From Octopus sinensis (Eukaryota): DNA of 64,000 nt. The DNA lies in the NCBI RefSeq assembly GCF_006345805.1, contig NC_043002.1, positions 31,186,001 through 31,250,000 of the forward strand, read 5' to 3'. A program made the translations under genes and the position numbers. How positions within the stretch are numbered: the first letter of the stretch is position 1; each line of letters opens with the position of its first letter. The notes under the pieces are model-generated. The model did no database searches. It was not told where the DNA came from and worked only from the letters and a program-made list of their open reading frames with translations. Positions 3,080-62,110 of this stretch are shown piece by piece.

Positions 3080-3760
3080 ACACAACCACATGACTCCATT
3101 CATCCTTTCTGCATTCAAACATTCACCCCACCACCATCATCATCCCGCCACCACTTCACCATCACCATTTTCACTATCATCACCATCATCAACACTACCA
3201 AATTTACAGTGACTCCCCCCCCCACCGCCAGTATCACAACCAAAAACACCTCCACCACATCTACCAGTAAATCACCATCACCATGGTCCCCAAGGTCACT
3301 ATTATCAACACCAACACCACCATCACCTCCAGACCAGCACCACACCACCACCACCACCACACCACCACCACCACCACCTCCGCCGTCGCAATCACTGCCG
3401 CCATCACCACCACCACCACCGCTGCCACCTCCACATCACCATCAGCACTACAAACGTAACCGCCAACTCCAGAACAACCACCACACCACCAACACCATCA
3501 TCCCCATCATCACACTACGATCATTAGTACCAGGGTAATCATCTTCAAAACATCCCCTCACCGTCATCACGTAACCATTCCTCAACATCACTATCACACC
3601 TTCATCATTATACCGTTTTAGTTTCATCATCAACGCCATCGTTATACTCCTAGTTGTCGTCATCACCATCACGACTACCAGCATGCACCACCACCAACAA
3701 CAGCAACAATAAGCACAAACACCACCACTGCCGCCGCCATCACTACTGCCGCCCTCACCT
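3080..3760. repeat. (CAC/CAT)n low-complexity tract
   Basis: Degenerate trinucleotide repeats giving Pro/His/Thr-rich pseudo-ORFs. Confidence 0.9.
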
Positions 3761-5800: not shown

Positions 5801-5880
5801 TACGAGAGATTATCATTACATCACATCGATGGGTGCTTGTATGTTATCGTTTGAGCAACGAGATTTATCCTAGATTTGTT

Positions 5881-6245
<365 letters not shown>

Positions 6246-7140
6246 TTTGTTCCTTGTTTTATATTTACTTACTGATCTGGGGAAATGTATTGGGCCCATA
6301 ATGGCTAATATTCTATTGAACTCAAAACCTACAGGAAAGTCATGAGTGGATTCTAGAGGAGATTACGGAAGGTCAGTGTTCTGGGGCAGAAGCAGAAACA
6401 TAGGAGTTACTGTGAAGAAATAGGATTAGATTACGAAGAATAACGAGAACACCAGTAATTTCGGGATTGCGTGAGAGGTGGAGGAATGAGACAAATAAGC
6501 TCCGAGGAAGTACAGCTAATGAATAAGTAAAAATGAATTATTCAAGTATTGGATAAAAGTGATTTTTTCTCCTAAATGCTTGCAGAATGAACATTATGGT
6601 CTAATTGTGTGCAGATCACTAATTAAAAGATATACCGTTGTATCTAATAGCTATTTGTATACTGTATATATATTGCCTCAATCTCGACTAAGAAGCGGTG
6701 TATTCTTAAAAATACTAAGGCTTACCCATCTTTGTGTTAATCTCATAGGATGCAGTAATAAGAAAGATACCACCCAGGTAGAAAAGCGGCTCACATCAAA
6801 AGTAGCCACCCGTATATATCTCAAAGGATAAATGAATTCTTAACATTACGAAGAATTAATTGAAGGAGTCAAAAAAACATTAATTTTCTTCTAGCTAACA
6901 ATTTTGTAGCTGTAGTAGTAGTAGCAGCAGCAATTGATGCTGTTGTTGTTGTTGTTGTCGTTATTTGCTTTCCTTTATATCAGATAAGAAATAAAAGGCA
7001 AGCTAGAAGAGACTGGAATATAATCCTGTTGTCTCTATATAACCAATGTCCATACAATCAACAAAGATATATATATATATATATATAATTATATATACAA
7101 ACGTATATACGGGTATATACATATAGTGACATAAAAATAC

Positions 7141-26881: not shown

Positions 26882-28455
26882 ATTTTTTATTTATCTAGTT
26901 TCAGCTCACAAGCTGTGGCCATGCTGGGGCACCGCCATTTGGTGTTGCTACATGATTTTACATCACGAGTGCTGTTTAGCAATTGCCATTTGGTGCATGA
27001 GAGAGTTCGATGCCGCTGCCCTCATCTGCACCTCCTGCCGTGAAGTTGGTTCATCCGGGATACCTGACAAGAAGAGATCCAGTTTCATTTTAAAGACATC
27101 CGCGTCCACCCCATGCACGTCACTCAGGTTCTTCGGGAGGATATTGAAGAGCTGTGAGCCTCTGAACCCAGGCTATCACAGTATCTTGTCCTACATCTTG
27201 ATGGCAAATTTGGAGTCCTTGGCACTATGCAGTGGCGCCCAGTTCTGGCATTTGTGTAACTCTCGATGCCAAAGTTTGGGACAAGTCCTTCTAGGATCTT
27301 CCAGATGTATATTATTGCATATCTTTCTCGCCTACGCTGTAAGGAATAGAGTCTCAATCTCTTGAGTCTTTCCCAATAGCTTATATGCTGCACAGAGGCT
27401 ATCTTGTTCGTGTAGCTTCGTTGGATCGCCTCAAGTTCTGTGATTAACTTGACACTGGATGGTGACCATAGCTGAGAGCAATAGTCAATGTGGCTTAGGA
27501 CAAGTGTTCTCCAGAGGACCATCATGGTTTCCTGGTCTCTTGTTCTGAAGGTTCTAAGAATCCATCCGGTCAGCCGCCTACATTTCATTGCCAATTTAAC
27601 AACATGCACATGAAAGGTTGCATCATCACTCATGTAAATACCCAAGTCTCGCACTGATTGTGCCTCTGGGATTGCAGTCCCTCCAGCTCCAGTGTATTTA
27701 TTGGGTATTGCATTTAGTTTTGCGTGCTGATAGCATAGAGCTTGAAAGTTTTCAGCATTGAACTGCATGATATTCTTTTCAGCCCACTTGTATATTTTGT
27801 CCAGCTCACATTGCAGGTGCTTAGTGTCTTCAGGGTTCTGTATTGCCTGTGAAACTTTTGTATCATCTGCATAACTTGTGATTGTGGCTCTCTGCGTGGC
27901 TGAGGGCATGTCTGAGGGGACCATTATGAACAGTAGTGGTCCCAAAACAGTGCCTTGCGGAACACCGCTCACTATTTGCGTGTTAATGGAAGTGGCCCCA
28001 TTGGCTAATACCACCTGACTTCTATCCTTCAGAAAGTCATGAAGCTATTCTCCCAATTTTCCAACTATACCAAGATCACGCAGTTTGTGACATAGCATTC
28101 CATGATCGACTTTATCAAAGGCCTTTGCAAAGTCGAGATATATGACTTCCACATTTGAGTGGTTGAGCAGTCATTTTAGCACCCAGACATAGTGTTGTAG
28201 GAGCTGAGTTAAGCGGCTTCTTCCTGGTCGGAAACCATGTTGTGTGTCCAGCAGCAAGTCATTTTCTTCAAGGAAGGTGATTAGTTTCTTTCTGACTATT
28301 CGTTCTATGACCTTGCTGATGTGTGAGGTCAGAGAGATAGGTCTGTAGTTCTTGGCCTCCGCTCTGTTACCTCCGTTATGAATAGGGCATATTTTACCTT
28401 CCTTCAGTTTTCTTGGAAGTTTGCCAGTTGCAAGGAAGCTCTGAAAGAGGAACTG

Positions 28456-29064: not shown

Positions 29065-29780
29065 GTTTCGTAGAGTAGGTGTTATTTCATACATTTCCAG
29101 ACATTTCTTAATCCAGTCTTGTAGACTATCAAAAGCTTTTGTATAGTCTACACAGGTTATCGATAAGTTTTTGCGTGATTTGTGATAATCTTCCAAGGTA
29201 ATCTGATTGATGAGTAGCCGATCTTTACAACCATAGGATCCACGTTTAAATCTTGCTTGCTCATTAAGGAATAAGCCACTTTGTATGAAAAAGCTATAGG
29301 TATATTCAGTCAAGACAGATGTTTGTATTTTATACATTGTTGTTAAGCAGGTTATGGGTCTATAATTGTTTGGTCTTTTTGTTTCTTCATTTTTTCAAAG
29401 TAGATTTGGCTGCTTCTCACAGTTTCTATAGCCATACTGCATCTCCATTTTGATTGGCTCATCCCAAATATTACTCCTGAATTTTCTAGCTTCTTCTGCA
29501 CTAAGTTTCTCATCTTCAGTACTTCGTTTTTCACTATTTATTTGGTTATGAAATCTCCTCTGGTGTGCCTCAAATAATGTATCTTGTTGATATTGATCTA
29601 TTCTTTTCTGATATCTGGAGAGCTTGTTTGCAACTGATATGATACGATGTTTCAACTCTTCTATTACTGTCCCAACTCCTTTCTCTGTGACTGAGTATCT
29701 TTCCTCAAGGTAATATTAGTATCTTGTGTTTCCTCACTTGTTCTGTTGTCAGGCTTCTAGTCTACTCAGGTCTTATCTTA
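29065..29780 (-). pseudogene. Decayed Dong/R4-type retrotransposon fragment
   Basis: GCKDRLLINQ...VDYTKAFDSL..WIKKCLEMY and ANKLSRYQKRI...FRSNIW motifs; 5' junction at a (TTG/TTA)n tract. Confidence 0.85.
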
Positions 29781-29826
29781 TATTTGTTGTTGTTCTTGTT
29801 GTTGTTGTTATTATTGTTGTTATGTG

Positions 29827-31175: not shown

Positions 31176-33124
31176 AGACAGACGTGCTGTTTTTTGCTCC
31201 GGCAAATGTCACGTGTTAACGTGAATTATTGAACATTTACGGCAACAGGTAGGACATTTTGGATATTTTTGGAAGCATAGTGAGGTTTATTGCTTGCCGT
31301 TAATACTTTTTTGGCATTAAAGTTAATTAGTGTTAACACTTTTCTGCGCGTAATAAGCTTCACTTGCTTCGGATGTATTTGTTCTGCCTGTTGGCGTATT
31401 TATTGTCTCACCTTTTAGTGAGAATTGTGTATTTTGAAGAGGCATAGCCCCTCCTCAAAAATTAATTTGTTCGCTTGTATTTACCACGGAGAACCAAGTG
31501 TGCTGCAACTAGGAGTACCCTGTTTCGTGAGGATTACCAGTTGCAGAACTGTGTTGCCATTATTTGAACTGGCTTCCTTCGTCCTTTTCTCTGTTCTGTC
31601 TTTCTGTTCTGTCATTGTGTTTTTTTCTTATTGGACTTTGAACTTTTAGTTGAACTTTTTTCAAAATCATGGCAACAAAAGAAACCACTGCTTTGGAATG
31701 GGAGGTTGTCCCACCCAAGCAGTGGATTGAAAGTCTTGAGAAGAGGACGGTGGTCCTACGAACCTATTCTAGGTCGCGTGGAGCTATCGCTCTCTTCGAC
31801 AGGAGCACCATAGAGAAAGAGTTGGGGGACCACCTACCAACGATAAAGTTTATTTCTCGGGGGAGTAAATTTGCAACGGTGTGGTTGCTGTTTGGTACCC
31901 CCGAGGAAGCTAGCAGATTTTCTAGCGAGCCACTGGAGGGAGAGGAAATTCTGTTCCTCCCCTCGTATTGTGGCAGAAAAGTAAAAAGAGCCTGGGTTTG
32001 TGGGCTGCCCCCGGGCACGGAGGCGGAATGGATCGAGAAGACCATCCGGCGAGGCCTGGGGGATAGCGGACCCAGGCTACTGAGTGTGAAAATGGCTCCC
32101 GCGGTCGCCTGGGAGGGGTCAAAGGCAACTTTGACCCTGTGGACACCGGTGGCCGTGGGAGAAATGAAATTCGCGGACTTCCTGAGAATGGCTCGGCACA
32201 GGTACTCGGTGATACTCGAGGGACGCCCCCCAAGTGTCACCTGTGCCTGAAGCCCGGACATATCAAGAGGAATTGTCCCGGGGGCCGTGGTGGTGCCCCG
32301 GAGCATGAAGGGGAAAAGGCGCCCGCCGCCCCCTCATTGGAGGGGGAGACGGTGGAAGTCGTGGAGGAGGTTGCCTCCACGAAAAGAAAGAGACAGGCGA
32401 GCAACAATGGCTGCTCGCCAAAGAACGCTCAGGTGGCGGAGGGGGATAGCGATCCCCCGTGTCTGGTGACGGAGTCCTTTGGGTCAGCAGTCTCCCCCAA
32501 AAGAAGGAGGAGAAAAAGAAAGAAAGGTCGGGCGGCTGATATCCATGAGCCGCAGACGTTGGCGGGAACTGTGCCGCCAACGAAAGAACTGAACGTATTG
32601 GTCCTCTTCTATAGAGGAGGAGAAATTGAAAAAAAAATGATGGAAGAGTACCACAAGGGAGCTCCTTTAGCCTTCACACAGGACCCCGAATGGCCTCCGC
32701 AGATAGCTGTGGAGGCTGTGGCGTTCGACGTGACGCTTGGGCTAAATGAGCTCAATGAAGATTATAGCTTGGTCCCGGGCGACGCGAACTCGGAACTTGA
32801 TTACGTTCTGAGGGAGGCGTGTATGATGGTGAAGGGCGCGGGCACAAGCTATTTCGAGGACGATATGTAATTATTGAACTGTTAGTATTAATAATGGACT
32901 GCTAAGTCCAAAAATTGGAAAAATTGTAAGAGGTTTAATACCTCGTTTTGTGTTTATCTTTAAAAAGAACAAAGTTTTAGAGAAGCGAAAGTCGGCGGGC
33001 GCTTTTTGTCTTCTCCCATCCTTATCATCTGTCTTTCATTATCATTCACTTCATTAATGTCCTCGTCCAGCCCGCAAAGCTAACTTAATCTGTGTACTGC
33101 CTTTATGGCAAATGTTTTGAAATA
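31176..33124 (+). mobile_element. ORF1-only non-LTR retroelement (Tx1/HAL1-like)
   Basis: About 490-bp 5' UTR, one gag-like ORF, about 250-bp 3' UTR ending in AATAAA, flanked by an imperfect 15-16-bp TSD; no endonuclease or RT coding sequence. Confidence 0.8.
31669..32870 (+). CDS. Gag-like ORF1 protein (~400 aa) with CCHC zinc knuckle; one-base frameshift at a C6 run (32226-32231)
   Basis: Joining the ORFs 31669-32250 and 32139-32870 gives ...VILEGRPPKCHLCLKPGHIKRNCP... (CX2CX4HX4C) followed by a basic KRRRRKRKK tract; GC-rich relative to the flanks. Confidence 0.8.
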
Positions 33125-36618: not shown

Positions 36619-38252
36619 GATATCGAAGCGCAAGCAGCAATACTTCAGAATAACATACTGTATATTTTACTTACTTCGGCTATTCTGCAGGAGCCACAAC
36701 ACAGGCATTCGTCTTCAGAAAGCATCTCGTATAGAACTTTAGGTGTCTATACTAGATGCTTTACCAGGACGTGTACCGCATTGTTGTTGCTTTCTGCAGT
36801 ATAATCACTTGAAATAGGATATAGAGAATGATTCATGTGCACGCACGCATACACACCAACATTAATATTCATATCTTCTAAGCTGTTTATGCTTCTATAT
36901 TACCATAATCATTTCGCTACTACTTTGTTTGAAAACCTGTAATCCAATAACTTCATTATACGCATAAGTATTATTGAATATTAATATAATTATTTATTAT
37001 ATTATCATCGATTATATGTTATCATATGATATTATACGATTATATATGTAATTATTCTATTTTCCGGTTATCGATTTCGTTATAGATTTATCGTCATCGT
37101 AATAACATATTTAACTCTATTTTTATTGGATATAGATCAATATCTAAAAGATGCTTCAACTCATGCATTTTAGAAGAGAACATAGCGAATTATATCGACA
37201 TCAGTACTTCTCTGATAACACTGGTCTGCATTTGGGAAATTTTTACATTTTATTTTTATTCACGGTTGTGATGTTACACATCCTGATTTTAAATATCTAA
37301 ACCATTTTGCTCTGTCATATAACGATGTTGAATAAAAGACCAATTGATAATAAAAGAAAATATGAATTATTAATAAATTGTTACTGTATTAAAATGAAGC
37401 AAGTAATCAGGGAAAAGCATATTCTCTTAGTTTTAAGGAAATATATTTTCCAAATCAACATGAAATGAACCACGTTCATCATTAAATGAATCAGAATTAT
37501 CAACATCAAACTAGATGAATGTAAAAAATATACTCCTATAAAACAATCATGCAGTCCAGTGTTATCATTATCTCTGTCTCAGTAAGTTCTAAGTTCAAAT
37601 TCCGCTGAGTTTGACTTTGCCATTAATACTTTCAACGTCGATGAAATAAGCACTAATTATGTACTGGTGTCGATGTAAAGGACTGCCGCCCTCCTGCAAA
37701 GTCTTAGGCCAAGCGTCTATATCAAAAAGGATTAATCTACCTCGGAAGAACAAAGGTTAAATACAAAGGACAGAAACGATGGGTTGTAGGGGATTTACTC
37801 TCTCTCTCTTATACAAATCTGACATGCAGGCACAGTCGTTCTTGTTTTATATTTCGCCAGTTCATCAATTATAAACGTACACACAAAAGCTAATTTTCAT
37901 TACACATTTACAAATTGAATTATATACGTTATGTATATTTTCAATTACATATGTGTGCTTCCAATTAAATAATGATATATGCAAATGGGATTTTTAATTA
38001 TATTATAGAAATTAAAAGCAAATCATGCAGTGTAATTCATAGAGATAAATACTTCGATTTCCGCAAATTTCAACAGTTCTACGACCAGGTATAGTATATA
38101 CAACTAGGTATATATAAAGTTAATATCCAATTTAAGCTTATCAATTATACTATGATATTTAAATCTACTTCTATGTATCTACCTATAGAAAAATTTGTTA
38201 ATATATGTATCTACGTATATATATATAATATATATATATATATATTATATAT

Positions 38253-39627: not shown

Positions 39628-39720
<93 letters not shown>

Positions 39721-39721
<1 letters not shown>

Positions 39722-39806
39722 TGTTTGACTTTTGCTTTGCATTTGTTCAAGTTGGCTCCAAGTCTCCCCATGAGACATCAAGAGACAAGTTAGATGTTCA
39801 TGTTGG
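39721..39806 (-). mobile_element. About 85-bp 3' terminus of the 54-kb Dong family
   Basis: Homologous to 53874-53965 and 52680-52764; ends GTCAAACAA-(ATA)n; (TAA)n on both sides. Confidence 0.8.
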
Positions 39807-39829
39807 TTATTATTATTATTATTATTATT

Positions 39830-42800
39830 CAGTAGTTTTATTTTTATAGCGTGCTTTCACTTCACTACCGAGCGCAGCTCTGTGTGCCTTGGGTATGTGC
39901 TGTGATTTGTTGTGATGCTCTGATGGTTAGTGTATGGAAAGTGTTCTGCGTAGTATGTGTGCAGTGCCTAGTAGTGCAATTTTTTGTATGTTATATGTGT
40001 TTGTAAGTCCTGGTGTTTTTGTTATGTATTTGTCTGAATATTTTTTTATCATGCCTAATGCACCTACTATGATAGGAATTGTTTCTGTTTTCAGGTTCTA
40101 CATTCTAGTTATCTCTATTTCCAGGTCTTTGTATTTTGAGAGTTTCTCCATTTCTTTTAGTGACACGTTGTCATCTGCCGGTATTGATACATCAATTAGA
40201 AAGCATTTTTTTTCTTCATGATCTCTGACAACTATATCTGGTCTGTTGGACTTAATTTCTCTATCTATGTGTATCGGCATATCCCAGAGTATGGTTGCTT
40301 TCTCGTTTTTGTGACCTTTTCTGGTGTGTGCCTATACCATCTTTTTCTGTTGTTATTCCATAATGTTGGCATAGCTTCCAATGTATGTAGGTTCCAACTC
40401 TGTCATGTCTGTGAATATATTCCTTCTTAGCCAGGACTGGGCAGCTAGAGATAATATGATTTATTGTTTCTTGTCCATCTCCACATATTCTGCAGTTACT
40501 TTAATATATTTCTTTTCATTACATGGTTTTGGTAATTTCTGGTGGGGAGGCTTTGGTCTTGTGCTGCAATTAAAATCCCTCTGTTTCTGCTTTGAGTCCT
40601 GAGCTTCTCAACCATTGCTGGGATTTTTCTTTGTCTATTTCTTTTGCGTTTAGTTTAGTCCAGTATTTACCATGAAGGGGCTTTTCTTGCCATCGTTTTA
40701 TCATGGCTCGTTGCTGTTCTATTTTTAGTTTGGATTTCATTTGTTTTATAGCTTTTGTTGTTTCTTCATCATCTTCTTCTTCTTCTGTTGTTTTATTAGG
40801 TGGTATGATTTCTTGTTTGTATTTGTCAGCTTCCTTAAATACTGAGAGCAGTTTTTGTTTTGCTCGTGTTTTGCTGCTATCTGGATCAGTTTTCTTCCTT
40901 CTGAAGTAGGTATTTTTGCAGTCCTATGGTGGTTATTTTATAGTAGTTTCCCAGCTGTATAATAAGGCTTCTACCACCTTCTATACGTTGTATATATAGT
41001 CTTTCTATGTCAGATTTTGGTGATGCATCCTAGATCCTGTCAGTATTTTTCTTGTTTTCCTATCTATTTTGGACAGTTCATTTGTGTCCAGTTAAGGATA
41101 TTGTAGCTGTAACTTATAACTGGGACAGCTAAAGTGTTGATACCTATTATCTTGTTTTTAGCATTGAGCTCTGTTTTTAGTATTGATCTAACTCGTCTAT
41201 AATATTCTTTTTTTTATTTTCTCTTTCATTTGTGTGTATTGTGTCTTATCTAGTTCATGGATTCCTAAGTATTTGTAAGTTTGGCTTTGGTCTAATTCTT
41301 TTATTTCATTGGTTTTATCTAGTGTGATGTTGTTACTCTTACTAGTTTTCCTCCTCTTTTCATGGTTACTTTGGCGCATTTTTCTAATCCAAATTTCATA
41401 TCTATTTCTTTGGTAAATCCATGAACTGTCTTTAATAGTGTTTCCAGCTGTTTGTCATTTGCAGCGTATAGTTTTAGGTCATCCATATATAAAAGGTGGC
41501 TGATCGTTTTGCCGTAACATTTATATCCGCATCCAGTTCTATTTAGCATATCAGATAGAGGTGACAGTGCCAAGCAGAAAAGGAGTGAGAGAGCGTGTCT
41601 CCCTGGAATATTCCTCTTCTAATGGGGATGTCTTTGGTTTTCATGAGTCCCTCTTTTGTTTGGAGGTGTAGGACTGTTTGCCATTATTCATAGAGTGCTC
41701 TATGAATTTTATGATTGTTGGTGCTACTTTGTTAATGGCTAGTGTTTCGAGGATCCATGTGTGGGGGATGCTATCAAACGCCTTTTTGTAGTCAATCCAG
41801 GCCATACTGAGACCTTTCTTCTTTCTGTGGCTGTCTTCAGTTACGGCTTTATTAATCATTAGTTGATCTTTACAGCCATATGAGCCCTTGCGTCATCCTT
41901 TCTGCTCTTCTGGGAACAGTTTGTTTTCGTCCAGGTGCTTGTTCAGCCTTTGCGATATCACTGCAGTAAATGCCTTGAACATAGTAGGGAGGCAGGTTAT
42001 TGGTCTGTAGTTTTCTGGTTTTTGTTTGTTTCATTTGATTTGGGAATTAAGATGGTTTTCCCCTTCGTGAGCCATTCAGGCATTGTCTCTGGCTCTGCTA
42101 GTATGCTGTTAAGTTTTCAGCCAGCTTTTTGTGCATTCCTGTTAGATATTTCAACCAGAAGTTGGGGATCTTGTCATGCCCAGGTGCCTTCCAGTTGCTT
42201 AGTTTTTGCAGTGCCTGGGTGACCTCTTCAGTTGTTATGGGGGTCCAAAGTTGTTCAGATGCCGAGTTTGTTATTTTCATACTCCTTTTTTTTGGCTGTT
42301 CGTTCGCCGACCATATTTCTCTCTAGAATTCTTCCAATTCTTCTGCCGTTGGTGCTGCAGTGACTTCTATTTTATTTTTGCCCAGTTCTTGATAGAACTT
42401 TTTGGGGTCGGAGTTGAACTTTTTGTTCTGTTCAAAGAAGCGTTGGCGTTTCTCGTACCGGCGGATTCTTTGAGCTTTGGCAAGGATATCTTGCTTCAGC
42501 TTTTCTTTTATCTCCGGCAAATCTTTTTCTGTGATGTTATATTTGCGGAGCATTTTTGTTCTCTTTTTGTTGCTTAGTAGCGTTGCTTGTTTGCTGATTT
42601 CATTAAGAATCGACAGGTCTTTTCTAATTTTTTTTTATTTTGTTTTGGATGTTATTTATCCACAGGGTTTTTTTGGATGGTGGTACTCCTGTTTGGGCGG
42701 GTTTGGGTGAGTATCCAGCTTCTTTTGTGGCTGCAGTGGCTGCTGCGTATATCAAGTCATTTAGTTCAGTGATATCACTTTTTTTTGTTTCAGTGGCTAG

Positions 42801-43822
42801 TTCAGTGACGGCTAGGTTTATGTTGTTTATAATTGGTGTTGTCATTGCGTTTATTTTTATTCTTGGGAGGTATGGTCAGTGGTCCATTTTGGGCTCTGTG
42901 GTTTTCAGTTCTTTGATTATTTTATTTTTTATATTATCATAATCATTAGGCTCCCCTTCGTTGTTTTTACATCGTGTTTGTTGGAATGTTGCGTTTGTCT
43001 TCGTGTTTTACAGTTTCAGTGTTTATATTATTGGGCATTGTTGTGTGGCTTCTATCTACATTTTCCTGGTGTATTTTTTCTTTTAAATGTTCTATTTCTA
43101 TTTCTGATATTTTTTTGGCTTTGAGAATGTATCTTCGTACGTTAGCTAATTTATTAGGGTTCATTGCTGTATCCAAGTCTATATCTCTATTATTTTCCTT
43201 CCATATTTTATATGTATGTGTTGTTGTATTTTCATTTTGTGGGTAGAGCATTGCTGTGAAGTATGCGTGTAAGATAGAAATGTATTCCTCACGTGTCCAT
43301 TTACGTCTTTTGGGTTTTAATTGCGGGACATGAGGTACAACGTCCGGCCCATTATTTTGACGGTCGTCGTTTTCGTAGGTTACCGGTCCGTTTATTTCTG
43401 TTGTCACATTATTTCGCACGTGTAGTTTTTCGTACATTTTTTGTTGTAGGTTAATGTACGTACCGCTCGATTGTTATTCTTGGTTGAATAGTATCGGTGG
43501 CATTTAATTTCTTCGTAGTTCCTTTGTACATGGTGTTTGAGGTCGGGGATGATCGTGTTGTTCCACGCATGTTTACATGTGTTGTGTTAGAGGTGGAGAT
43601 AATATCGAGTCAAAATACATCATTTCGTTTCGAAAATAGTAATAAATTTCAATTAGTATTACTTACTGCGGATATAGTCCAATTCATTGTTAGTAAATCT
43701 TTGGCTCCATAGGGTGTCCTTGTTTTCGATGTTTGTGTATAGATTTCGGAGCTCTGTATTTTCCTTCTTACATCTTAAACGTCCCCGGTGTCTCCTCTTA
43801 CAACTTAAACGTCCCTGGTGTC

Positions 43823-43823
<1 letters not shown>
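39830..43823 (-). mobile_element. Near-full-length, decayed Dong/R4-type RLE retrotransposon
   Basis: N-terminal RRKWTREE...LANVRR block; KAPGHDKI, AWIDYKKAFDS and HLLYMDDLKL RT motifs; NRPDIVV...IDVSIP...KLSKYKDL RLE; LLGTAHILRRTLS* end; many stops and frameshifts; (TAA)n at both ends. Confidence 0.93.
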
Positions 43824-43882
<59 letters not shown>

Positions 43883-44880
43883 TATTATTATTATTATTAT
43901 TATTATTATCATTATTATATTAGCAATTGTTCAAAGCAATCCACTGGGGTTTATAGTATTTATTTAATGAGAGCAATCCAGAGCAAGGATTAGCATGAGA
44001 ACCCTGGACCAAAGCACTTCCTAATACTAAGTGAGTACATGCACTGTGTCAACACAGAGTTTGGCCCTGAATGTGTTGATTCTTTACAGCGTTTACACCT
44101 GCAAGGTTACTTTCTGGAAAAAGTATCAAAATATGCCCGACAAGAATGCGATTTGACACGTGACTGCCATACAGTCAACGAAAATACGATGAGGGAATGA
44201 TCTTCAAGGGATAACTAATCCATTATGCATGAAATATAAAAAATGCTAACCAGTTGGTAGTTAAAATACTTACTTAAATATCAATAGAAGTTTCTACAAG
44301 CATTCAAAAATTCTTGAAATTTGCAAACAACTTTAAAATTTTATATTTGTACCCTTTCATGAGGTAACGGAGGTTTATCTCCCGCTAGCGATATGAACGA
44401 GTTATTTTGCACCAAAAAGCCAATATGTGAGTTCCTTTCATGATAACTACTGCAGTATAGTTCATTCAAACAGAACATCCACATTTAAGTGTGGGTAAAC
44501 ATTACCTCTCGCTAACATAGACTTCTTTAAAAGGTTAAGCAAACGTATGTACCATAGTGGATAAGTGAGCTAATAATTCTGAATATTATTCCTTTATTTC
44601 TCGGTTTGACATAGAACTTCTATGATGACATCCCTTGTATCTTATTATATAAATGCGTAGCGGGGATACTTTGTCTTATAATTTTCAGCGGGTCCTTTAC
44701 AGCTTTTCGTTTCACTATGTTCTGCAAGATTGACCTTATGTCGATAGATTAATGGTTTCGAAAGAGATGTGTCATGGAGAGAAGAGTCAGTAGAATTGGT
44801 AGAATTAATTGGAGGGAAGAATATTGTGTATCCGTTGTAGAAGTGTAACTTGATACTGGTATTGGAATCGGTGTCAAGTA

Positions 44881-47734: not shown

Positions 47735-48405
47735 AAATTTAGAACAAGATCAGCAATTTTGGTGTGCGTGGTAAGTCGATTATAACGACCCCCAGTACTC
47801 CACTGGTACTTATTTAATCAACCCCTAAAGGATGAAATTCAAAGTCGATCTCGACGGAAATTGAATTTAGAACGTACAGACGGACAAAATGCTGCTGAGC
47901 ATTTTGCCCGGCACGCTAATGATTCTGCCACCTTACCAACTGGCATGTTTTAATGAATTAAGAGCAAACATTTTTAACCCCGTCATATATGCTATGAATA
48001 TTTTTAACGCATCATAAAGATATTCTTTTCTACTTTAGACACAAGGCCCGAAATTTTGGGCGAGGCGGCCAGTCGATTAGATCGACTCCAATACGCAACT
48101 GGTACTTAATTTGTCGACCCCGAAAGAATGAAAAGCAAAGCCAACCTCAGCGGAATTTGAACTCAGAACGTAGCGGCATATGAAATATCTATTTCTTTAC
48201 TACCTACAATGGGCTAAACATAGAGGAGACAAACGGATTAAGTCGATTATATCGACCTCAGTGCGTAACTAGTACATAATTTATCGACCCCGAAAGGATG
48301 AAAGGCAAAGTCGACCTCGGCGGAATTGAACTCAGAATATGAATACAGACGAAGTACCACTCAGCATTTCGCCCAGCGTGCCAACGTTTCTGCCTGCTCG
48401 CAGCC
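47735..48405 (-). mobile_element. Cluster of three same-orientation SINE family B copies
   Basis: Repeated CGACCCCGAAAG(G/A)ATGAAA...GGAATT(T)GAACTCAGAA cores at about 47.8, 48.1 and 48.3 kb; the 47.8-kb copy is more diverged. Confidence 0.85.
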
Positions 48406-51477: not shown

Positions 51478-51680
51478 AGTTTTGGCACAAGGCTAGCAAT
51501 TTCGTGGGAGTAATATGTCGATTAGATTAATCCCAGTGATGAACTGGCGCATATTTTATCGACCCCGAAAATATGAAATCAAAGTCGACCTGAGCAGAAT
51601 TTAACCTCTGATTGTATACACGGACGAAATATCGCTAAGCCTTTTATCCAGTGTCGGAACGATTCTGCCAGCTCGCAAAC
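51478..51680 (-). mobile_element. SINE family B
   Basis: GCGAGCTGGCAGAATCGTT head plus the family B core. Confidence 0.85.
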
Positions 51681-51980
51681 TTTTCGTATCATATAAATTA
51701 CAGCCATCGTTATTCCAACTCTAAATAAAAACTGGCTTTTATAACAACCATGAATCTCAGTGTCGTAAGATTAGATGAATTCAGAGAAGCAAAGGTTGTA
51801 GTAGTGGTGTAGAAGGAGAAGAAAATCAGATATATAAACTAGTGGCTGTAAAACATTCACAAGTGAGGAAATCGGAGGGGGTCTGTTTGGAGACGTTGTC
51901 ATTGAAATAAATACAACTACCAAATATGCACATGGGTAGAGTATACTCAACTACAAATACGGAATAATAATAATAATAAT

Positions 51981-52185
51981 CACTACCTAACTCAGATACC
52001 AGGAAACCCCAAAATGGCAGAAATTCAAAAGATAGTGCTCATGGGAACTGCTTATATCCTAAGCAAAATCCTTTCTATGTAATCTCAAGTTTTAAAACAA
52101 ACATAATTTTCGTTTTTTTTGTTTGTTTGTTTTTCGACATTCACTACTACAACACTAAATACAAAACCAAATATATGGCACACTA
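51981..52185 (+). mobile_element. Dong 3' fragment A
   Basis: YLTQIPGNPKMAEIQKIVLMGTAYILSKILSM* plus partial 3' UTR; preceded by (AAT)n. Confidence 0.9.
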
Positions 52186-52427
52186 AAGGGTAAAGACCCC
52201 CTTCGGTCATGAATGACCATGGGATTGCACCTAGAAAGTTACCCTCCTAGACACAAGTCCGGGCAAGGTTGTTTATGGAAGACCAGCAGTCGCCCATGCA
52301 TACCAGCCTCCCCTCTCCACGGCACCAGTGTTATCCAAGGGAAAGACAAAGGTCGATACAGCTTGGCACCAGTGACGTCGCAACTCATTTCTACAGCAGA
52401 GTGAACTGGAGCAACGTGAAATAAAGT
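52186..52427 (-). mobile_element. SINE family D lacking its tRNA head
   Basis: ACTTTATTTCACGTTGCTCCAGTTCAC body as at 21.7 kb, ending ...GACCGAAGGGGGTCTTTACCC. Confidence 0.75.
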
Positions 52428-52454
52428 ACTTATAATAATAATAATAATAATAAT

Positions 52455-52512
<58 letters not shown>

Positions 52513-52515
<3 letters not shown>

Positions 52516-52764
52516 GTGCTCATGGGAACAGCTCATATCCTACGCAAAATACTTTCTATGTAATCTCAAGTTTTAAACAAACATAATTTTCGTTTTTTTT
52601 GTTTGTTTGTTTTTCGACATTCACTACTACAACACTAAATACAAAACCAAATATATGGCACACTAGGCATAACAACAACGTGAACTTCCAACCTGTTGTG
52701 TCTTGAGGTCTCTGGTGAGACTTGGAGCCAACTTGTACAAATATAAAGCAAATGTCAAACATAG
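52513..52764 (+). mobile_element. Dong 3' fragment B with complete 3' UTR
   Basis: IVLMGTAHILRKILSM*...GTCAAACATAGA-(ATA)n; (AAT/AAC)n upstream. Confidence 0.9.
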
Positions 52765-52778
52765 AATAATAATAATAA

Positions 52779-53308
52779 ATGACCTGGTAGGTTCTCATCT
52801 TAACTGATTTAAAGTGTCATGATGTACACGTTTTCTCTTGGTATAAAAGATGGGCTACAGCAAATATTCTGCTCAGATTTGCTTATCAGTTGCTTGACCA
52901 TAACCAGTTGAGCATGTCCCTTGATGGCTGATGCTATATGCATCATTGATCAGGAGCAGAAGTAGTCGGGGAGCATCATAGCCATGTGTTGATAGGTATT
53001 AATTGGGGTATGAATAAGTCACCTCTGGAAACATGGGTATTTCATCCCACATACTCAAACGGCCCTTATTCAAGGAACAGTTGAGTGGGGTGGGTTTCTT
53101 AACCAGTAAAAAAAAATTGTAATTGGATCCCACGTGCAAGGTCATGCGCTCTTCATCTTGATATGAAATCACCATATCGCGCATATATAGTCGTGATACA
53201 TGTGCCTGCTAAACCCTTATCAGAATGGTAGTCATGATGAGTATAACTGAGCTTTGTATATTGTACCCCCATGGTCACATTCTCATGACATGCACTGCTC
53301 TCTCACTC
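52779..53308 (+). mobile_element. Unclassified non-coding interspersed element X, copy 1
   Basis: Reverse-complement homolog of 55982-56557; ends CTCTCTCACTC-(AAT)n and starts after (AAT)n. Confidence 0.8.
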
Positions 53309-53334
53309 AATAATAATAATAATGGCTTCATCTT

Positions 53335-53515
53335 TTGGCACAACACAAGCAATTTGGTGGAGGGTCTAATTCGATTGCATCGACCCCAGTGTTCAACTTG
53401 TATTTATTTCATCGACCCCAAAGTATTAAAAGCAATTTCGACCCCAGCGAAATTTGGACTCAGAACATTAGGAAAGAAGAAATGTGGCTAAGCATTTTCC
53501 CGATAGGTTAACGGT
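53335..53515 (-). mobile_element. SINE family B, diverged
   Basis: ATCGACCCC...AAATTTGGACTCAGAAC core. Confidence 0.7.
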
Positions 53516-53654
53516 TCTTAAATATATATAATTATTCTAGTTTGATATACAGTCAAACAATCAAATAATTAAATGTTGTTATATCACGTAAATATGTTTA
53601 TTCTTCACTATAGGTGACTCTTTTAATTGTTTATTTAAGAGACGAGAAATTATG

Positions 53655-53795
53655 TACGTTATTTACATTTGATGGATATTTCTCCTAATCTTGTTTGTTG
53701 TTAACACAACATTTCGGATGATATACTCTCCAGCCTTCATCATGTGTCTTGGGGAAATTTCAAAGCTGAGTTCTTATTCCTAAGGTATTTTTGAT
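53655..53795 (-). mobile_element. Tail of the second SINE-E copy with hammerhead motif (53704-53748)
   Basis: GACAC-ATGATGA-A-GGCTG-loop-CATCC-GAAATGT-T-GTGTT; homologous to 6091-6245. Confidence 0.85.
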
Positions 53796-53815
53796 ATTAT
53801 TATTATTATTATTAA

Positions 53816-53848
<33 letters not shown>

Positions 53849-53873
53849 CATTATTATTATTATTATTATTATT

Positions 53874-55916
53874 CTATGTTTGACTTTTGCTTTATATTTG
53901 TACAAGTTGACACCAAGTCTCACCCAGAGACCTCAAGAGACAACAGGGTTGGAAGTTCATGTTGTTGCTATGCCTAGTGTGCCATATATTTGGGGGGTGG
54001 GGGTGTTGTACTAATGAATGTCTAAAAAAAGTTTTTTTTTTCTTTTTTTTTTTTAACCGAAAATTATGTTTGTTTTAAACCCTGAGATTACATAGAAAGT
54101 ATTTTGCGTAGGATATGAGCAGTTCCCATGAGCACTATCTTTTGAATTTCTGCCATTTTTGGGTTTCCTGGTATCTGAATTAGATAGCAATCAGCTCCTT
54201 TTGCTATCATTCCCAGGGCACCTATGACAACAGGTATTGTTTTAGTCTTCAGGTTCCACATTTTGCTGATTTCTATTTCAAGATCTTTATATTTGCTCAG
54301 TTTTTGGTAGGTCTTGACAGATACGTTTATATCGATTGGGACAGTCATATCAATGAGGAGGCATGTTCTTTGTTTGAAGATTTTCAATATGATGTCTGGC
54401 CTATTTGCATCTATCTTTCTGGCAGTTTGAATGGTGAAGTTCCAGAGGAGTGAGATGTGGTCATTTTCAAGCACTGGGGGTGGTTTGTGTTCCCACCAGT
54501 TTTTTTCATGGGGCAAATCCAGGTTTTTACAGATTACCCAGTGAATATATTGTGCAGCTCTATCGTGCCTGTTGAGATACTCTGTAGGCGCTAGAAGACT
54601 GCACTTGGAGACCACATGGTCAATGGTTTCATTTTGTTGCTTGCATACACGACACGTTGGACTGCTTCTGATCTTTAATATGTTGGCCTGGTAGTTTCTT
54701 GTTGGTAGGCATTGATCTTGAGCTGCTATGATAAACCCCTCTGTTTCAGATTTTAAGCCATAGGCCATTAGCCATTGATGGGTCAGGGCTTTGTCAACAT
54801 CTGCATTATTTGCTCTCTTTGGGTATTTGCCATAGAGAGGTTTTTCTTGCCATTTATCATTCAGAATATCTAAGGTCGCAGATTTAGCACGGGTTTTCAT
54901 ACGCTTAGCTTTTTCTGTGCCTGTTTCTTGTATGTCTATCTCTAATTCCGAAATTTGTTGTATTCGGAATTCACTTAGATATTCCTCTGCCTGTTTTGTT
55001 ACTGAGTATGATGCTTTCTTGCTTTCATGTTTTGAGACAAGTTTTAACATCCAGTCCTCAGAGTCTTTCAGGTAGGTGTCTAGGCCAATTGTAGCAATCT
55101 TCATTGTTATTGCCAGTTGCAAAAGACCACGGCCTCCCTCTTTTCTTGGCAGATAGAGTCGTTCTGTATCTGCCTTAGGGTGGTGCATTCTATGCATTGT
55201 CAACAGTTTTCGTATTTTTCTGTCAAGATTACATATTTCAGTAATTGACCAGTTAACGATATTGAAACTGTAAGTCACGACTGGTATGGCTAATGCATTG
55301 ATCGCTTCGATCCTGTTTCTCGCATTCAGCTCTGTCTTGAGTATTGCTCTTACTCTGCGATAGCATTCTCTCCTGATCCTTTCCTTCATCTCTGAATACC
55401 TTATTCCTTCTCCTTCAATTACCCCTAGATACTTGTAGTTCTCTGCTGGGTCTAATTCGTTTATGACATACTGCTGGTCAAGGTTAACGTTAGATGTTTC
55501 TGTCATTTTTCCTTTGATAAAGGTAGCTTTTGCGCACTTATCGAGGCCAAATTGCATTCTGATGTCATCACTGAATTGTTTGACAATCGCTAGTAAGCCC
55601 TTGAGTTGTTGATCATTTTTTGCAAAGAGCTTTAAATCATCCATGTAAATGAGATGATTTATATTTTTATCAAACATTTTATATCCGTACTGCGCGTCAT
55701 TGAGCAGTTTTGAGAGAGGTATTAAGGCTAAACAGAAGAGGAGCGGTGATAGTGAGTCACCCTGGAAAATGCCACATGAAATTTTTACATCACCAGCATT
55801 TAGAGATTCATTGTCACTGTTCAAAGTTAGTGTGGTTCTCCATGATCTCATACTTACAGACAAAAAGTTTCGCAGAGCAGGTGCTATTTTATACATTTCT
55901 AGGCATTTATTAATCC
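53874..55916 (-). mobile_element. Young 5'-truncated Dong/R4 RLE retrotransposon
   Basis: Uninterrupted ORF from within the RT to the stop codon, plus 3' UTR; (TAA)n on both sides. Confidence 0.95.
54088..55916 (-). CDS. RT (partial)-CCHC-restriction-like endonuclease polyprotein fragment
   Basis: GIFQGDSLSPLLF, HLIYMDDLKL, CRVC...HVVSKC, RHD, NRPDI...LIDMTVP and KLSKYKDL motifs, with no internal stops over about 609 codons. Confidence 0.9.
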
Positions 55917-55981
<65 letters not shown>

Positions 55982-56557
55982 GAGTGAGAGAGCAGTGCAT
56001 GCAATCAAATTAACACAGGGGTAAAATATACGAAGCCCAGTATACCCATAATGACTACCCGTCTGATAAGGGTACACCAGGCACATGCATCACAACCATA
56101 TGTGCGCGACATGGTGATCTCATATCAAGATAAACAGTACATGACCTTGCAGGTGGGGACCAGTTGAAGTTTTCCTCTGGTATGGTAATCGCTCCCGCTC
56201 AAAAGGTCCCTGAATTAGCGTTGTTTAAGGATGTTGAACGAAACACCTGTGTTTCCAGAGGTGATTTATTCAAACCCCAAAGAATCTCTATCAACACATG
56301 GCTATGATGCTCCCCCACTGCTTGTGATCACAGATGCACATATCGTCGGCCACTAAGGGACATGCTCAACTGATTATGGTCAAACAACTGACAAGCAAAT
56401 CTGTGGTATTGAGCAGAATATTTGCTGTAGCCCATCTTTTATACCAAGGCAAAACACCCATCTTTTATACCAAGACAAAACAATGTATATGATAACACTT
56501 CCAATCAGTTAAGATCAGAAGCCACGAGAACCACTGCATGGTACTGGATCAGGGCAT
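55982..56557 (-). mobile_element. Unclassified element X, copy 2
   Basis: Starts ATGCCCTGATCC after (AAT)n and ends CTCTCTCACTC-(AAT)n; has an internal 26-bp tandem duplication near 56430-56482. Confidence 0.8.
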
Positions 56558-56558
56558 A

Positions 56559-56589
<31 letters not shown>

Positions 56590-56610
56590 TATTATTATTT
56601 CATTATTATT

Positions 56611-56690
56611 CAGGCCACTGCTTGGAATCGAACTCGGAATTTTGAGGTGGGTGGGCTGGGCTCTTAACCACTATGCTATATGCCCGTGGG
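56611..56690 (-). mobile_element. tRNA-like head of the second SINE-E copy
   Basis: CCCACGGGCATATAGCATAGTGGTTAAGAG...TTCCGAGTTCGATTCCAAGCAGTGGCCTGAATAAT matches 5881-5965. Confidence 0.85.
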
Positions 56691-56917
56691 CATATGACTC
56701 TTTTCATATAAATGTATATTTTTATACGGTTATGAAAAATGTATAAATATATAGCATGGTCATCACGCACGTACACACGCATACACACACACACAAACAC
56801 ATGATTGCAACAGTTACAAGATCTAAGAAATCGGCAGATATAACTCTGTAACTTTTAGATTTCGGAATGTCTTTTGTAATATAAACGAAAAATTATCTGC
56901 AAGTCTATGTTTGTATG

Positions 56918-61458: not shown

Positions 61459-61649
61459 TCTATATGCATGAGCGTACTCAAATAAGCGAAAGCATTCACC
61501 GTGTGAGAAGCCTATTGTAGTTCAGGCTTTCGTGACTAGATGTCACTTGGTACAACCCTCAGATATTAGTCTTCCAACCGGTATTGTCGGTGGTTTGTAC
61601 TGCCACGTTTTGCGCGTTTGTTTAGCAGTGGATCTGCTCTGTCCGTCCA

Positions 61650-62110
61650 TTTTTGCGTTGGCTGAAACGAAGGAAATGCGTGCTTCTGTGAAATTTGTGG
61701 GGAAAACGGCGGCGGAAACAATTGCCATACGTCAAACAGCTTACAAGGCCGCTACCATGAGTAAAGCACAAGTTTACGAGAGATTTCCATGCTTTAGAAA
61801 TGGTCATTGGTTGCTTGAGGCCCTACGTCGTTCAGATCGACCGTCGATCTCTCGAATGAATGAATGCATCTTGAAAATTCATGAACTGATCTTGGAAGAA
61901 CGTCACCGAAACTTTGACGAACTTGATATGAATACTGGATCTCCTACCAATAAATTTTGAGCGAGGGATTGCGAATAAAAATTGGTACAGCAATATTTGT
62001 GTCTCGCTTGCTCACAAAATATCAATAGCAGAAACGACTACAGGCGTGTCGTGAACGGAAAGAAGTTGGAAGTTGATCCAGTCCCTGTTTTGAAGGTCAT
62101 GACTGTTGAT
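61650..62110 (+). pseudogene. Mariner transposase remnant (N-terminal HTH to first catalytic Asp region)
   Basis: EMRASVKF..GKTAAET....AY....MSKAQVYE.F..FRNG...LE...RSDRPS, followed by a degenerate FVSRLLT...KVMTVDD. Confidence 0.8.

What the first reader, a model, noticed from the sequence alone, without database searches (positions are those of the whole stretch)
53655..56690. Nested structure: SINE-E split at its internal (AAT)n by a Dong element and element X
On the minus strand the order is SINE-E head (56690-56611), (AAT)n, X, (AAT)n, Dong, (AAT)n, SINE-E hammerhead tail (53795-53655). The intact copy at 5881-6245 shows the pre-insertion state. The SINE therefore disperses the Dong target site through the genome and acts as a mobile landing pad. 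It also places a Pol III promoter upstream and a self-cleaving motif downstream of the cargo.
Basis: partly seen in the sequence, partly recalled or inferred. Interest (0 to 1): 0.75.

Follow-up and report, generated by a model that had tools for sequence, protein, structure and literature searches.

The report
Dong retrotransposon nested inside a SINE
One copy of a short tRNA-like repeat has been split at its internal (AAT)n by two later retroelement insertions; this is the ordinary behaviour of (TAA)n-specific Dong elements, and the claimed hammerhead ribozyme is not there.

Summary
On the minus strand the order is SINE-E head, (AAT)n, repeat X, (AAT)n, a 5'-truncated Dong-type LINE, (AAT)n, SINE-E tail. 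A 10-bp direct repeat (AAAAGAGTCA) brackets the whole structure, so head and tail most likely come from one original insertion. A paralogous uninterrupted copy (5881-6241) shows the family layout: head, (AAT)n, tail. The LINE has a reverse transcriptase, a CCHC knuckle and a C-terminal restriction-like endonuclease. All four Dong-A copies in the window, and relatives in two other genomes, sit in (TAA)n in one fixed orientation. That is the known behaviour of Dong.

Three parts of the interpretation fail.
- There is no hammerhead. Rfam gives no ribozyme match even at E≤10, and the CUGANGA core is absent from both tails.
- Pol III read-through would stop at a T4 run 210 nt from the head, and the Dong copy is truncated and dead.
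- Only 1 of 6 Dong-type pieces in the window lies in SINE-E. The others lie in other elements' (TAA)n arrays or tails.

The "mobile landing pad" idea is therefore a plausible passive side effect, shown here once. It is not a demonstrated relationship, and a genome-wide test was not possible with these tools. Low interest.

The parts
56695..56704 (-). 5' copy of the putative target-site duplication AAAAGAGTCA of the split SINE-E. It lies 4 nt upstream of the head.
   Evidence: longest shared word between the 30-nt 5' flank and the 3' region. A shared word of 10 or more occurs in about 2% of random segment pairs from the window.
56611..56690 (-). SINE-E head. It is tRNA-like, with an A box (TAGCATAGTGG) and a B-box-like motif (GTTCGATTC).
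   Evidence: 79% identity to 5881-5960; box motifs; weak tRNA match on the paralogue, 18.5 bits.
56558..56610 (-). (AAT)n, the proximal remnant of the SINE-E internal array.
55982..56557 (-). Element X: a 576-bp non-coding repeat with a fixed 3' end, CTCTCTCACTCA, abutting (ATA)n. It carries an internal 26-bp tandem duplication at 56431-56482.
   Evidence: second copy at 52781-53308, 78% identity, also flanked by (AAT)n on both sides, 5' end 23 nt shorter; no open frame; no similarity to Dong or SINE-E.
55917..55981 (-). (AAT)n between X and Dong.
53874..55916 (-). Dong-A1, a 5'-truncated Dong-type (restriction-like-endonuclease) non-LTR retrotransposon. The ORF is open from the truncation point to the stop at 54088-54090 and is followed by a 3' UTR of about 215 nt ending ...AAAGTCAAACATAG. 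The 3' UTR carries a hairpin at 53933-53915.
   Evidence: ORF; RVT_1, zf-RVT; aligns through RT, CCHC and the PD..D..K endonuclease region of R2 proteins, E about 1e-16; best relative 64% identity; starts at residue 382 of the 989-aa relative P0001; 3' end conserved in 3 copies.
53796..53873 (-). (AAT)n, serving as the Dong tail and/or the distal remnant of the SINE-E array.
53625..53795 (-). SINE-E tail. No ribozyme was detected in it.
   Evidence: 85% identity to 6097-6240; no hammerhead.
53615..53624 (-). 3' copy of the putative target-site duplication AAAAGAGTCA.
5881..6241 (+). Uninterrupted paralogous SINE-E: head 5881-5962, (AAT)n 5964-6085, tail 6086-6241. It is flanked by the TSD TAGATTTGTT (5871-5880 and 6242-6251). 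It contains no internal T4 run; the first is at 6257.

Best explanation
This is an ordinary nested transposon structure. A short composite tRNA-like SINE (head, internal (AAT)n, tail) inserted once and created a 10-bp target duplication. Its internal (AAT)n later served as an integration site for two retroelements. One is a Dong-type LINE, which uses a restriction-like endonuclease and target-primed reverse transcription on (TAA)n. It arrived 5'-truncated and therefore dead. The other is X, a non-coding element that also behaves as specific for (TAA)n.

Shown: the anatomy, the target duplication, the RT, CCHC and endonuclease domains, and the (TAA)n association of every Dong-A and X copy.

Inferred: the mechanism (cleavage and priming within the repeat), the order of events, and that X is mobilised in trans by a Dong-type enzyme.

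SINE-E carries a usable target wherever it lands, but it is only one of several sources of (TAA)n. Dong's own tails and the tails of other elements are used just as readily.
For: - Head and tail match the paralogous intact copy and break exactly at the edges of its (AAT)n.
- A 10-bp direct repeat flanks the whole 3.1-kb structure, and a 10-bp TSD flanks the intact copy.
- The ORF has RVT_1 and zf-RVT. It aligns through RT, CCHC and the endonuclease region of R2 proteins, 9nl3/9dou, at about 1e-16.
- Four of four Dong-A copies are truncated at different 5' points, share one 3' end, and are flanked by (AAT)n on both sides in the same orientation.
- Two of two X copies show the same pattern.
- Ten of the eleven (AAT)n arrays of 14 bp or more in the window abut a Dong or X end.
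- Relatives at 58-64% amino-acid identity in two unrelated assemblies are also embedded in (TAA)n, one with a second truncated copy in its tail.
- The literature reports that Dong elements target TAA microsatellites (PMC3812793) and that most endonuclease-type LINE clades, including R4, are target-specific (PMC4640811).
Against: - The 5' copy of the direct repeat lies 4 nt from the head rather than abutting it, and the chance probability is only about 0.02.
- Only two SINE-E copies were available, so the family consensus and the ancestral state of the array rest on n = 2.
- No orthologous empty site could be examined.
- The RT phylogeny against named Dong/R4 references could not be run.
- X shares no sequence with Dong, so its dependence on Dong is conjecture.
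Confidence: 0.85

Rival explanations
1. SINE-E is a dedicated mobile landing pad for Dong, so Dong insertions are enriched in SINE-E arrays. The SINE supplies a Pol III promoter and a self-cleaving ribozyme that act on the inserted cargo.
For: - One of two SINE-E copies in the window is occupied, by two insertions.
- The intact SINE-E array is the only (AAT)n in the window that is not already next to a Dong or X end. It is therefore the only array here whose origin is clearly independent of Dong.
- A-box and B-box motifs are present in the head.
Against: - No ribozyme is present.
- The first Pol III terminator lies 210 nt from the head, inside X, and nine T≥4 runs precede the tail.
- The Dong copy lacks the N-terminal part of its ORF (about 380 codons) and its 5' UTR.
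- Five of six Dong-type pieces in the window are not in SINE-E.
- Co-orientation is forced by Dong's strand-specific use of (TAA)n.
Confidence: 0.07
2. Head and tail are two unrelated partial SINE-E insertions, or products of recombination between two copies, that happen to bracket a (TAA)n cluster.
For: - The direct repeat is offset by 4 nt at the 5' side.
- Head and tail differ somewhat in identity to the paralogue, 79% against 85%.
- The region is a dense transposon nest.
Against: - Both pieces break exactly at the array edges, lie in the same orientation and in the correct order, and share a 10-bp flanking repeat.
- A head-only SINE fragment (3'-truncated) is not what target-primed reverse transcription produces.
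- There are only two SINE-E copies in 64 kb, so a chance juxtaposition is unlikely.
Confidence: 0.05
3. X and Dong did not insert into a pre-existing SINE array. Instead the arrays are the elements' own (TAA)n tails, and the SINE originally had little or no internal repeat.
For: Dong-type elements end in (TAA)n, and every array in the split copy abuts an X or Dong end.
Against: - The paralogous intact copy carries a 122-bp (AAT)n at exactly the same position with no insert.
- An array lies between the head and the 5' end of X, where no element's tail is expected.
Confidence: 0.03

Closest known systems
Dong (Bombyx mori) and DongAg / DongBg, the (TAA)n-specific non-LTR retrotransposons of the R4 clade; 'Dong-R4' LINEs annotated in octopus genomes
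   Same: - A single ORF with RT, then a CCHC knuckle, then a C-terminal PD-(D/E)xK endonuclease.
- Insertion in (TAA)n in a fixed orientation, with variable 5' truncation and nesting of one copy in another's tail.
- TAA targeting is stated in PMC3812793. Dong-R4 is abundant in Octopus vulgaris (PMC13282606), and a Dong is present in the O. bimaculoides repeat library (PMC9115989).
   Different: - Placement in the clade by RT phylogeny was not tested.
- The nearest protein in the databases is only 64% identical.
- The source species is unknown.
Tx1L inserting into the Tx1D DNA transposon of Xenopus, and other site-specific LINEs whose targets are transposons
   Same: A site-specific LINE whose target sequence is carried around the genome by another mobile element. 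'Transposons' are listed among LINE targets in PMC4640811 and PMC5035012. The Tx1L/Tx1D example itself is from my own knowledge.
   Different: There the target is a sequence unique to the host transposon. Here the target is a generic microsatellite that also occurs outside SINE-E, and most Dong copies in the window are not in SINE-E.
Retroelement-borne microsatellites (Alu and L1 tails and internal proto-microsatellites; RTE-associated microsatellite families in Lepidoptera)
   Same: A retroposon seeds the same microsatellite at many loci (PMC3812793, PMC2887409).
   Different: Those reports concern the birth of microsatellites. They do not concern later capture of the repeat by a microsatellite-specific LINE.
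Hammerhead-bearing retroelements (retrozymes, Penelope-like elements, the Schistosoma Sm-alpha SINE)
   Same: Only a superficial GATGA...CGAAA resemblance in the tail.
   Different: The core CUGANGA is absent, there are no helices I to III, and no Rfam hammerhead model matches at E≤10.

Membership tests
Dong / R4-clade non-LTR retrotransposon with restriction-like endonuclease | ORF with a reverse transcriptase followed by a CCHC zinc knuckle and a C-terminal PD-(D/E)xK restriction-like endonuclease | tested here: met
   - RVT_1 at 1.2e-13 and zf-RVT.
- The ORF aligns to R2 proteins 9nl3 and 9dou across RT, CRVC..H..C and RPDIIL..LLIDMTV..K.SKYK.
Dong / R4-clade non-LTR retrotransposon with restriction-like endonuclease | Insertion specifically in (TAA)n, in a fixed orientation, with the 3' end abutting the repeat | tested here: met
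   - Four of four Dong-A copies and Dong-B are flanked by (AAT)n.
- Relatives L009 and L010 are flanked in the same way.
Dong / R4-clade non-LTR retrotransposon with restriction-like endonuclease | RT phylogeny groups the element with named Dong/R4 references rather than R2, NeSL, CRE or HERO | not testable with these tools
   No named Dong or R4 reference sequences are in any accessible collection. R2 structures match only at about 1e-16, so the element is not R2 itself.
tRNA-derived SINE | A 5' head derived from a tRNA, with internal Pol III A and B boxes | tested here: inconclusive
   - Rfam tRNA scores 18.5 bits (E 0.32), below the gathering score of 29.
- ARAGORN finds nothing.
- An A box (TAGCATAGTGG) and a B-box-like motif (GTTCGATTC) are present at positions 13 and 58.
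tRNA-derived SINE | A short non-coding unit flanked by target-site duplications, dispersed in several copies, with no internal Pol III terminator | tested here: met
   - 361 bp with a 10-bp TSD.
- Two copies in 64 kb.
- No T4 run inside the intact copy; the first lies 16 nt past its end.
- Copy number in the genome is unknown.
Hammerhead ribozyme | Conserved core CUGANGA ... GAAA with helices I to III and a UH cleavage site | tested here: not met
   - No Rfam hammerhead family at gathering score or at E≤10.
- CUGANGA is absent from both tails.
- Fold z-scores are -0.29 and -0.20.
Transposon-targeting site-specific LINE (Tx1L/Tx1D type) | The target sequence is confined to the host transposon, so insertions are found essentially only inside it | tested here: not met
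   Five of six Dong-type pieces in the window lie in (TAA)n outside SINE-E.

The most novel reading that the evidence does not exclude
Genome-wide, SINE-E could be the principal primary source of new (TAA)n arrays. Its amplification would then set the number of safe integration sites for Dong-type LINEs and for the non-autonomous element X. That would be a three-way dependency between a Pol III SINE, a microsatellite-specific LINE and that LINE's parasite. In this window the SINE-E array is the only (AAT)n whose origin is clearly independent of Dong.
Probability: 0.15. Interest if true: 0.45.

Novelty: new member of a known kind. Interest (0 to 1): 0.18.

Why it matters
It matters little beyond repeat annotation. 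The locus is a clean worked example of how (TAA)n-specific LINEs build nested clusters. It also warns that a SINE with an internal microsatellite will often be annotated as two fragments around a LINE. If the landing-pad idea held genome-wide, it would show that one transposon family can expand the niche of another. Nothing here shows that.

Tried and rejected
- **Ribozyme search.** I ran Rfam at gathering score on the whole window and at E≤10 on both SINE-E copies and the nested region. No ribozyme matched. The only relevant hit was a weak tRNA match.
- **tRNA search.** ARAGORN found no tRNA.
- **More SINE-E copies.** The 18-mer in viral contigs gave one chance hit in a phage-like contig. The 25-base pattern in metagenomes gave nothing. 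The 18-mer in metagenomes gave 7 hits, all limited to the seed. A genome-wide census was therefore impossible.
- **Source genome by protein search.** The best hit was 64% identical, so the genome is not in the database. An octopus is plausible (PMC9115989, PMC13282606) but not shown.
- **X as part of Dong.** I looked for similarity between X and Dong-A, Dong-B or SINE-E and found none. X has no open frame.
- **A further Dong fragment.** I suspected one just 3' of the array at 39629 by eye, but tblastn did not support it, so I dropped it.
- **Original Dong paper.** The 1993 paper (PMC309301) is not held.

Full report
**Observation**

Read on the minus strand, 56704-53615 contains the following features in order:
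- a 10-bp word, AAAAGAGTCA (56704-56695), then 4 nt;
- an 80-bp tRNA-like head (56690-56611);
- (AAT)n (56610-56558);
- a 576-bp non-coding repeat, X (56557-55982);
- (AAT)n (55981-55917);
- a 2043-bp LINE fragment (55916-53874);
- (AAT)n (53873-53796);
- a tail of about 170 bp (53795-53625);
- the same 10-bp word (53624-53615).

Head and tail match the two ends of an uninterrupted 361-bp element at 5881-6241. The head matches at 79% and the tail at 85%. In that element the two ends are separated only by a 122-bp (AAT)n, and a perfect 10-bp TSD, TAGATTTGTT, flanks it.

Both homologies break exactly at the array edges. A shared word of 10 nt or more occurs in about 2% of random 30-nt and 101-nt segment pairs from this repeat-rich window. 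That null is inflated by microsatellites.

The tail extends about 30 nt further than stated. The 'intact copy' is a paralogue, not the empty site.

**What the inserts are**

The LINE fragment carries a 609-codon frame, open from the truncation point to a stop at 54088.
- Pfam finds RVT_1 and zf-RVT.
- Against solved structures it aligns with R2 proteins through the RT, the CCHC motif (CRVC...H...C) and the PD..D..K restriction-like endonuclease region (RPDIIL...LLIDMTV...KLSKYK) at E about 1e-16.
- It is therefore an endonuclease-type early-branching LINE, but not R2.
- It begins at residue 382 of its closest full-length relative (989 aa, 64% identity). It lacks the N-terminal part of the ORF and the 5' UTR.

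Three more copies of the same family (Dong-A) lie at 52513-52764 (+), 51981-52185 (+) and 39805-39722 (-).
- All four copies are truncated at different 5' points.
- The three copies that retain the 3' end (all but 51981-52185, which is cut short by repeat Y) share the ending ...AAAGTCAAACATAG.
- All are flanked by (AAT)n on both sides, in the same orientation relative to the repeat.

A second, degenerate, near-full-length family (Dong-B, 43822-39848, minus strand) is flanked by (AAT)n in the same way. Relatives fetched from two unrelated public assemblies are also embedded in (TAA)n, and one has another truncated copy in its tail.

The literature states that Dong elements target TAA microsatellites (PMC3812793). 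It also states that endonuclease-type LINE clades, including R4, are mostly target-specific (PMC4640811). On architecture and target this is a Dong-type element. Clade placement by phylogeny could not be tested.

X has no open frame and no similarity to Dong or SINE-E. Its second copy (52781-53308, 78% identity) is again flanked on both sides by (AAT)n in the Dong orientation. It has the same 3' end and a 5' end 23 nt shorter. This is the behaviour expected of a non-autonomous element retrotransposed into (TAA)n. That it depends on Dong is my inference.

**What fails**

The hammerhead.
- Rfam gives no hit at gathering score in the whole window.
- It gives no ribozyme family at E≤10, with lax filters, on either SINE-E copy.
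- Neither tail contains CUGANGA. The intact copy reads CCGAUGA, and the split copy reads AUGAUGA at the same place.
- Neither tail folds better than shuffled sequence.

The Pol III promoter.
- The head has a good A box and a B-box-like motif, but it scores only 18.5 bits as tRNA.
- The intact copy has no T4 run inside it and one just past its end. This fits a Pol III unit.
- In the split copy the first T4 lies 210 nt from the head, inside X, and nine such runs precede the tail. A Pol III transcript could not reach Dong or the tail.
- The Dong copy is dead on arrival in any case.
- Co-orientation of Dong with the SINE follows from Dong's strand-specific use of the repeat and adds no further evidence.

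**The landing-pad idea**

It is true that a SINE carrying (AAT)n delivers a usable Dong target wherever it lands, and one of the two copies here is occupied. However:
- Of six Dong-type pieces in the window, only one is in SINE-E. The others are in the tail of repeat Y, in Dong-B's own tail, in an array at 51963, in the array that holds Dong-B, and next to a degenerate (AAC/AAT)n at 29.8 kb.
- Ten of the eleven (AAT)n arrays of 14 bp or more abut a Dong or X end.

The simpler rule is that any (TAA)n gets filled, and each insertion leaves a new (TAA)n tail for the next.

A genome-wide test was not possible. Scans of viral and metagenome collections returned only chance seed matches, and the source genome is not in the protein database.

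**Comparison and verdict**

The closest known systems are:
- Dong/R4 elements, which share the architecture and the target;
- conceptually, LINEs that target other transposons (PMC4640811, PMC5035012). That membership fails here because the target is not confined to SINE-E.

Retroelement-borne microsatellites are well known (PMC3812793, PMC2887409).

The structure is real and neatly resolved. It is an ordinary nested insertion explained by known Dong biology. The ribozyme and promoter embellishments are not supported, and the landing-pad generalisation rests on a single case.

Noticed in passing
window 51963-53530: A second nested (TAA)n cluster lies directly beside the finding. In order it contains (AAT)5, Dong-A 3' fragment (51981-52185), unclassified repeat Y (52186-52423) ending in (AAT/AAC)n, a Dong-A 3' fragment (52513-52764), (AAT)5, X copy 2 (52781-53308), (AAT)5 and repeat Z. 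The order Dong then X is the reverse of that in the finding, so X and Dong move independently.
   Followed up: partly
window 39722-43922 (minus strand): A near-full-length but frameshifted second Dong-like family (Dong-B, 43822-39848) covers residues 7-989 of relative P0001. It is flanked by (AAT)n at 43823-43922 and 39807-39847. It has a 30-bp tandem duplication at its 5' end (43766-43823). An 85-bp Dong-A stub (39805-39722) is nested in its tail and is followed by (AAT)31.
   Followed up: partly
window 29065-29821 (minus strand): This is the 5' half of a Dong-like ORF (P0001 residues 109-397) with no 3' half. A degenerate (AAC/AAT)n lies upstream at 29784-29821. It overlaps the first 50 nt of Dong-A1 at 86% identity. 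3' truncation is unusual for a LINE, so a later deletion or rearrangement is likely.
   Followed up: no
window 53915-53933 (minus strand); L010 about 3100-3125: A conserved hairpin lies in the Dong-A 3' UTR (AGGTCTC-TGGGT-GAGACTT). A compensatory change occurs in the 64%-identical relative L010 (GGTCCC...GGGACT). It is a candidate RT-recognition structure.
   Followed up: partly
window 53325-53530, 48073-48369, 51480-51645, 37586-37678: Repeat Z is an abundant SINE-like repeat of about 200 bp containing repeated 'CGACCCC' motifs. At least five diverged copies (69-77% identity) are in the window.
   Followed up: no
window 55905-55916: The 5' truncation point of Dong-A1 falls at an internal GGATTAATAAATG. 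The TAATAA gives microhomology with the (TAA)n target, which suggests microhomology-mediated joining of the 5' end.
   Followed up: no
window 56431-56482: X copy 1 carries a 26-bp tandem duplication (CTTGGTATAAAAGATGGG...) that is absent from X copy 2.
   Followed up: no
whole window; e.g. 27124-28014 (-), 31669-32870 (+), 61532-61960 (+): The window is 34.7% GC and extremely rich in microsatellites, giving 134 Tandem Repeats Finder rows, mostly (AT)n, (TATG)n, (GATA)n and (AC)n. Other transposon remnants are present: a different LINE RT, a gag-like CCHC ORF and a mariner-like N-terminus. No host gene was recognised. The source species was not determined; an octopus is a guess.
   Followed up: no
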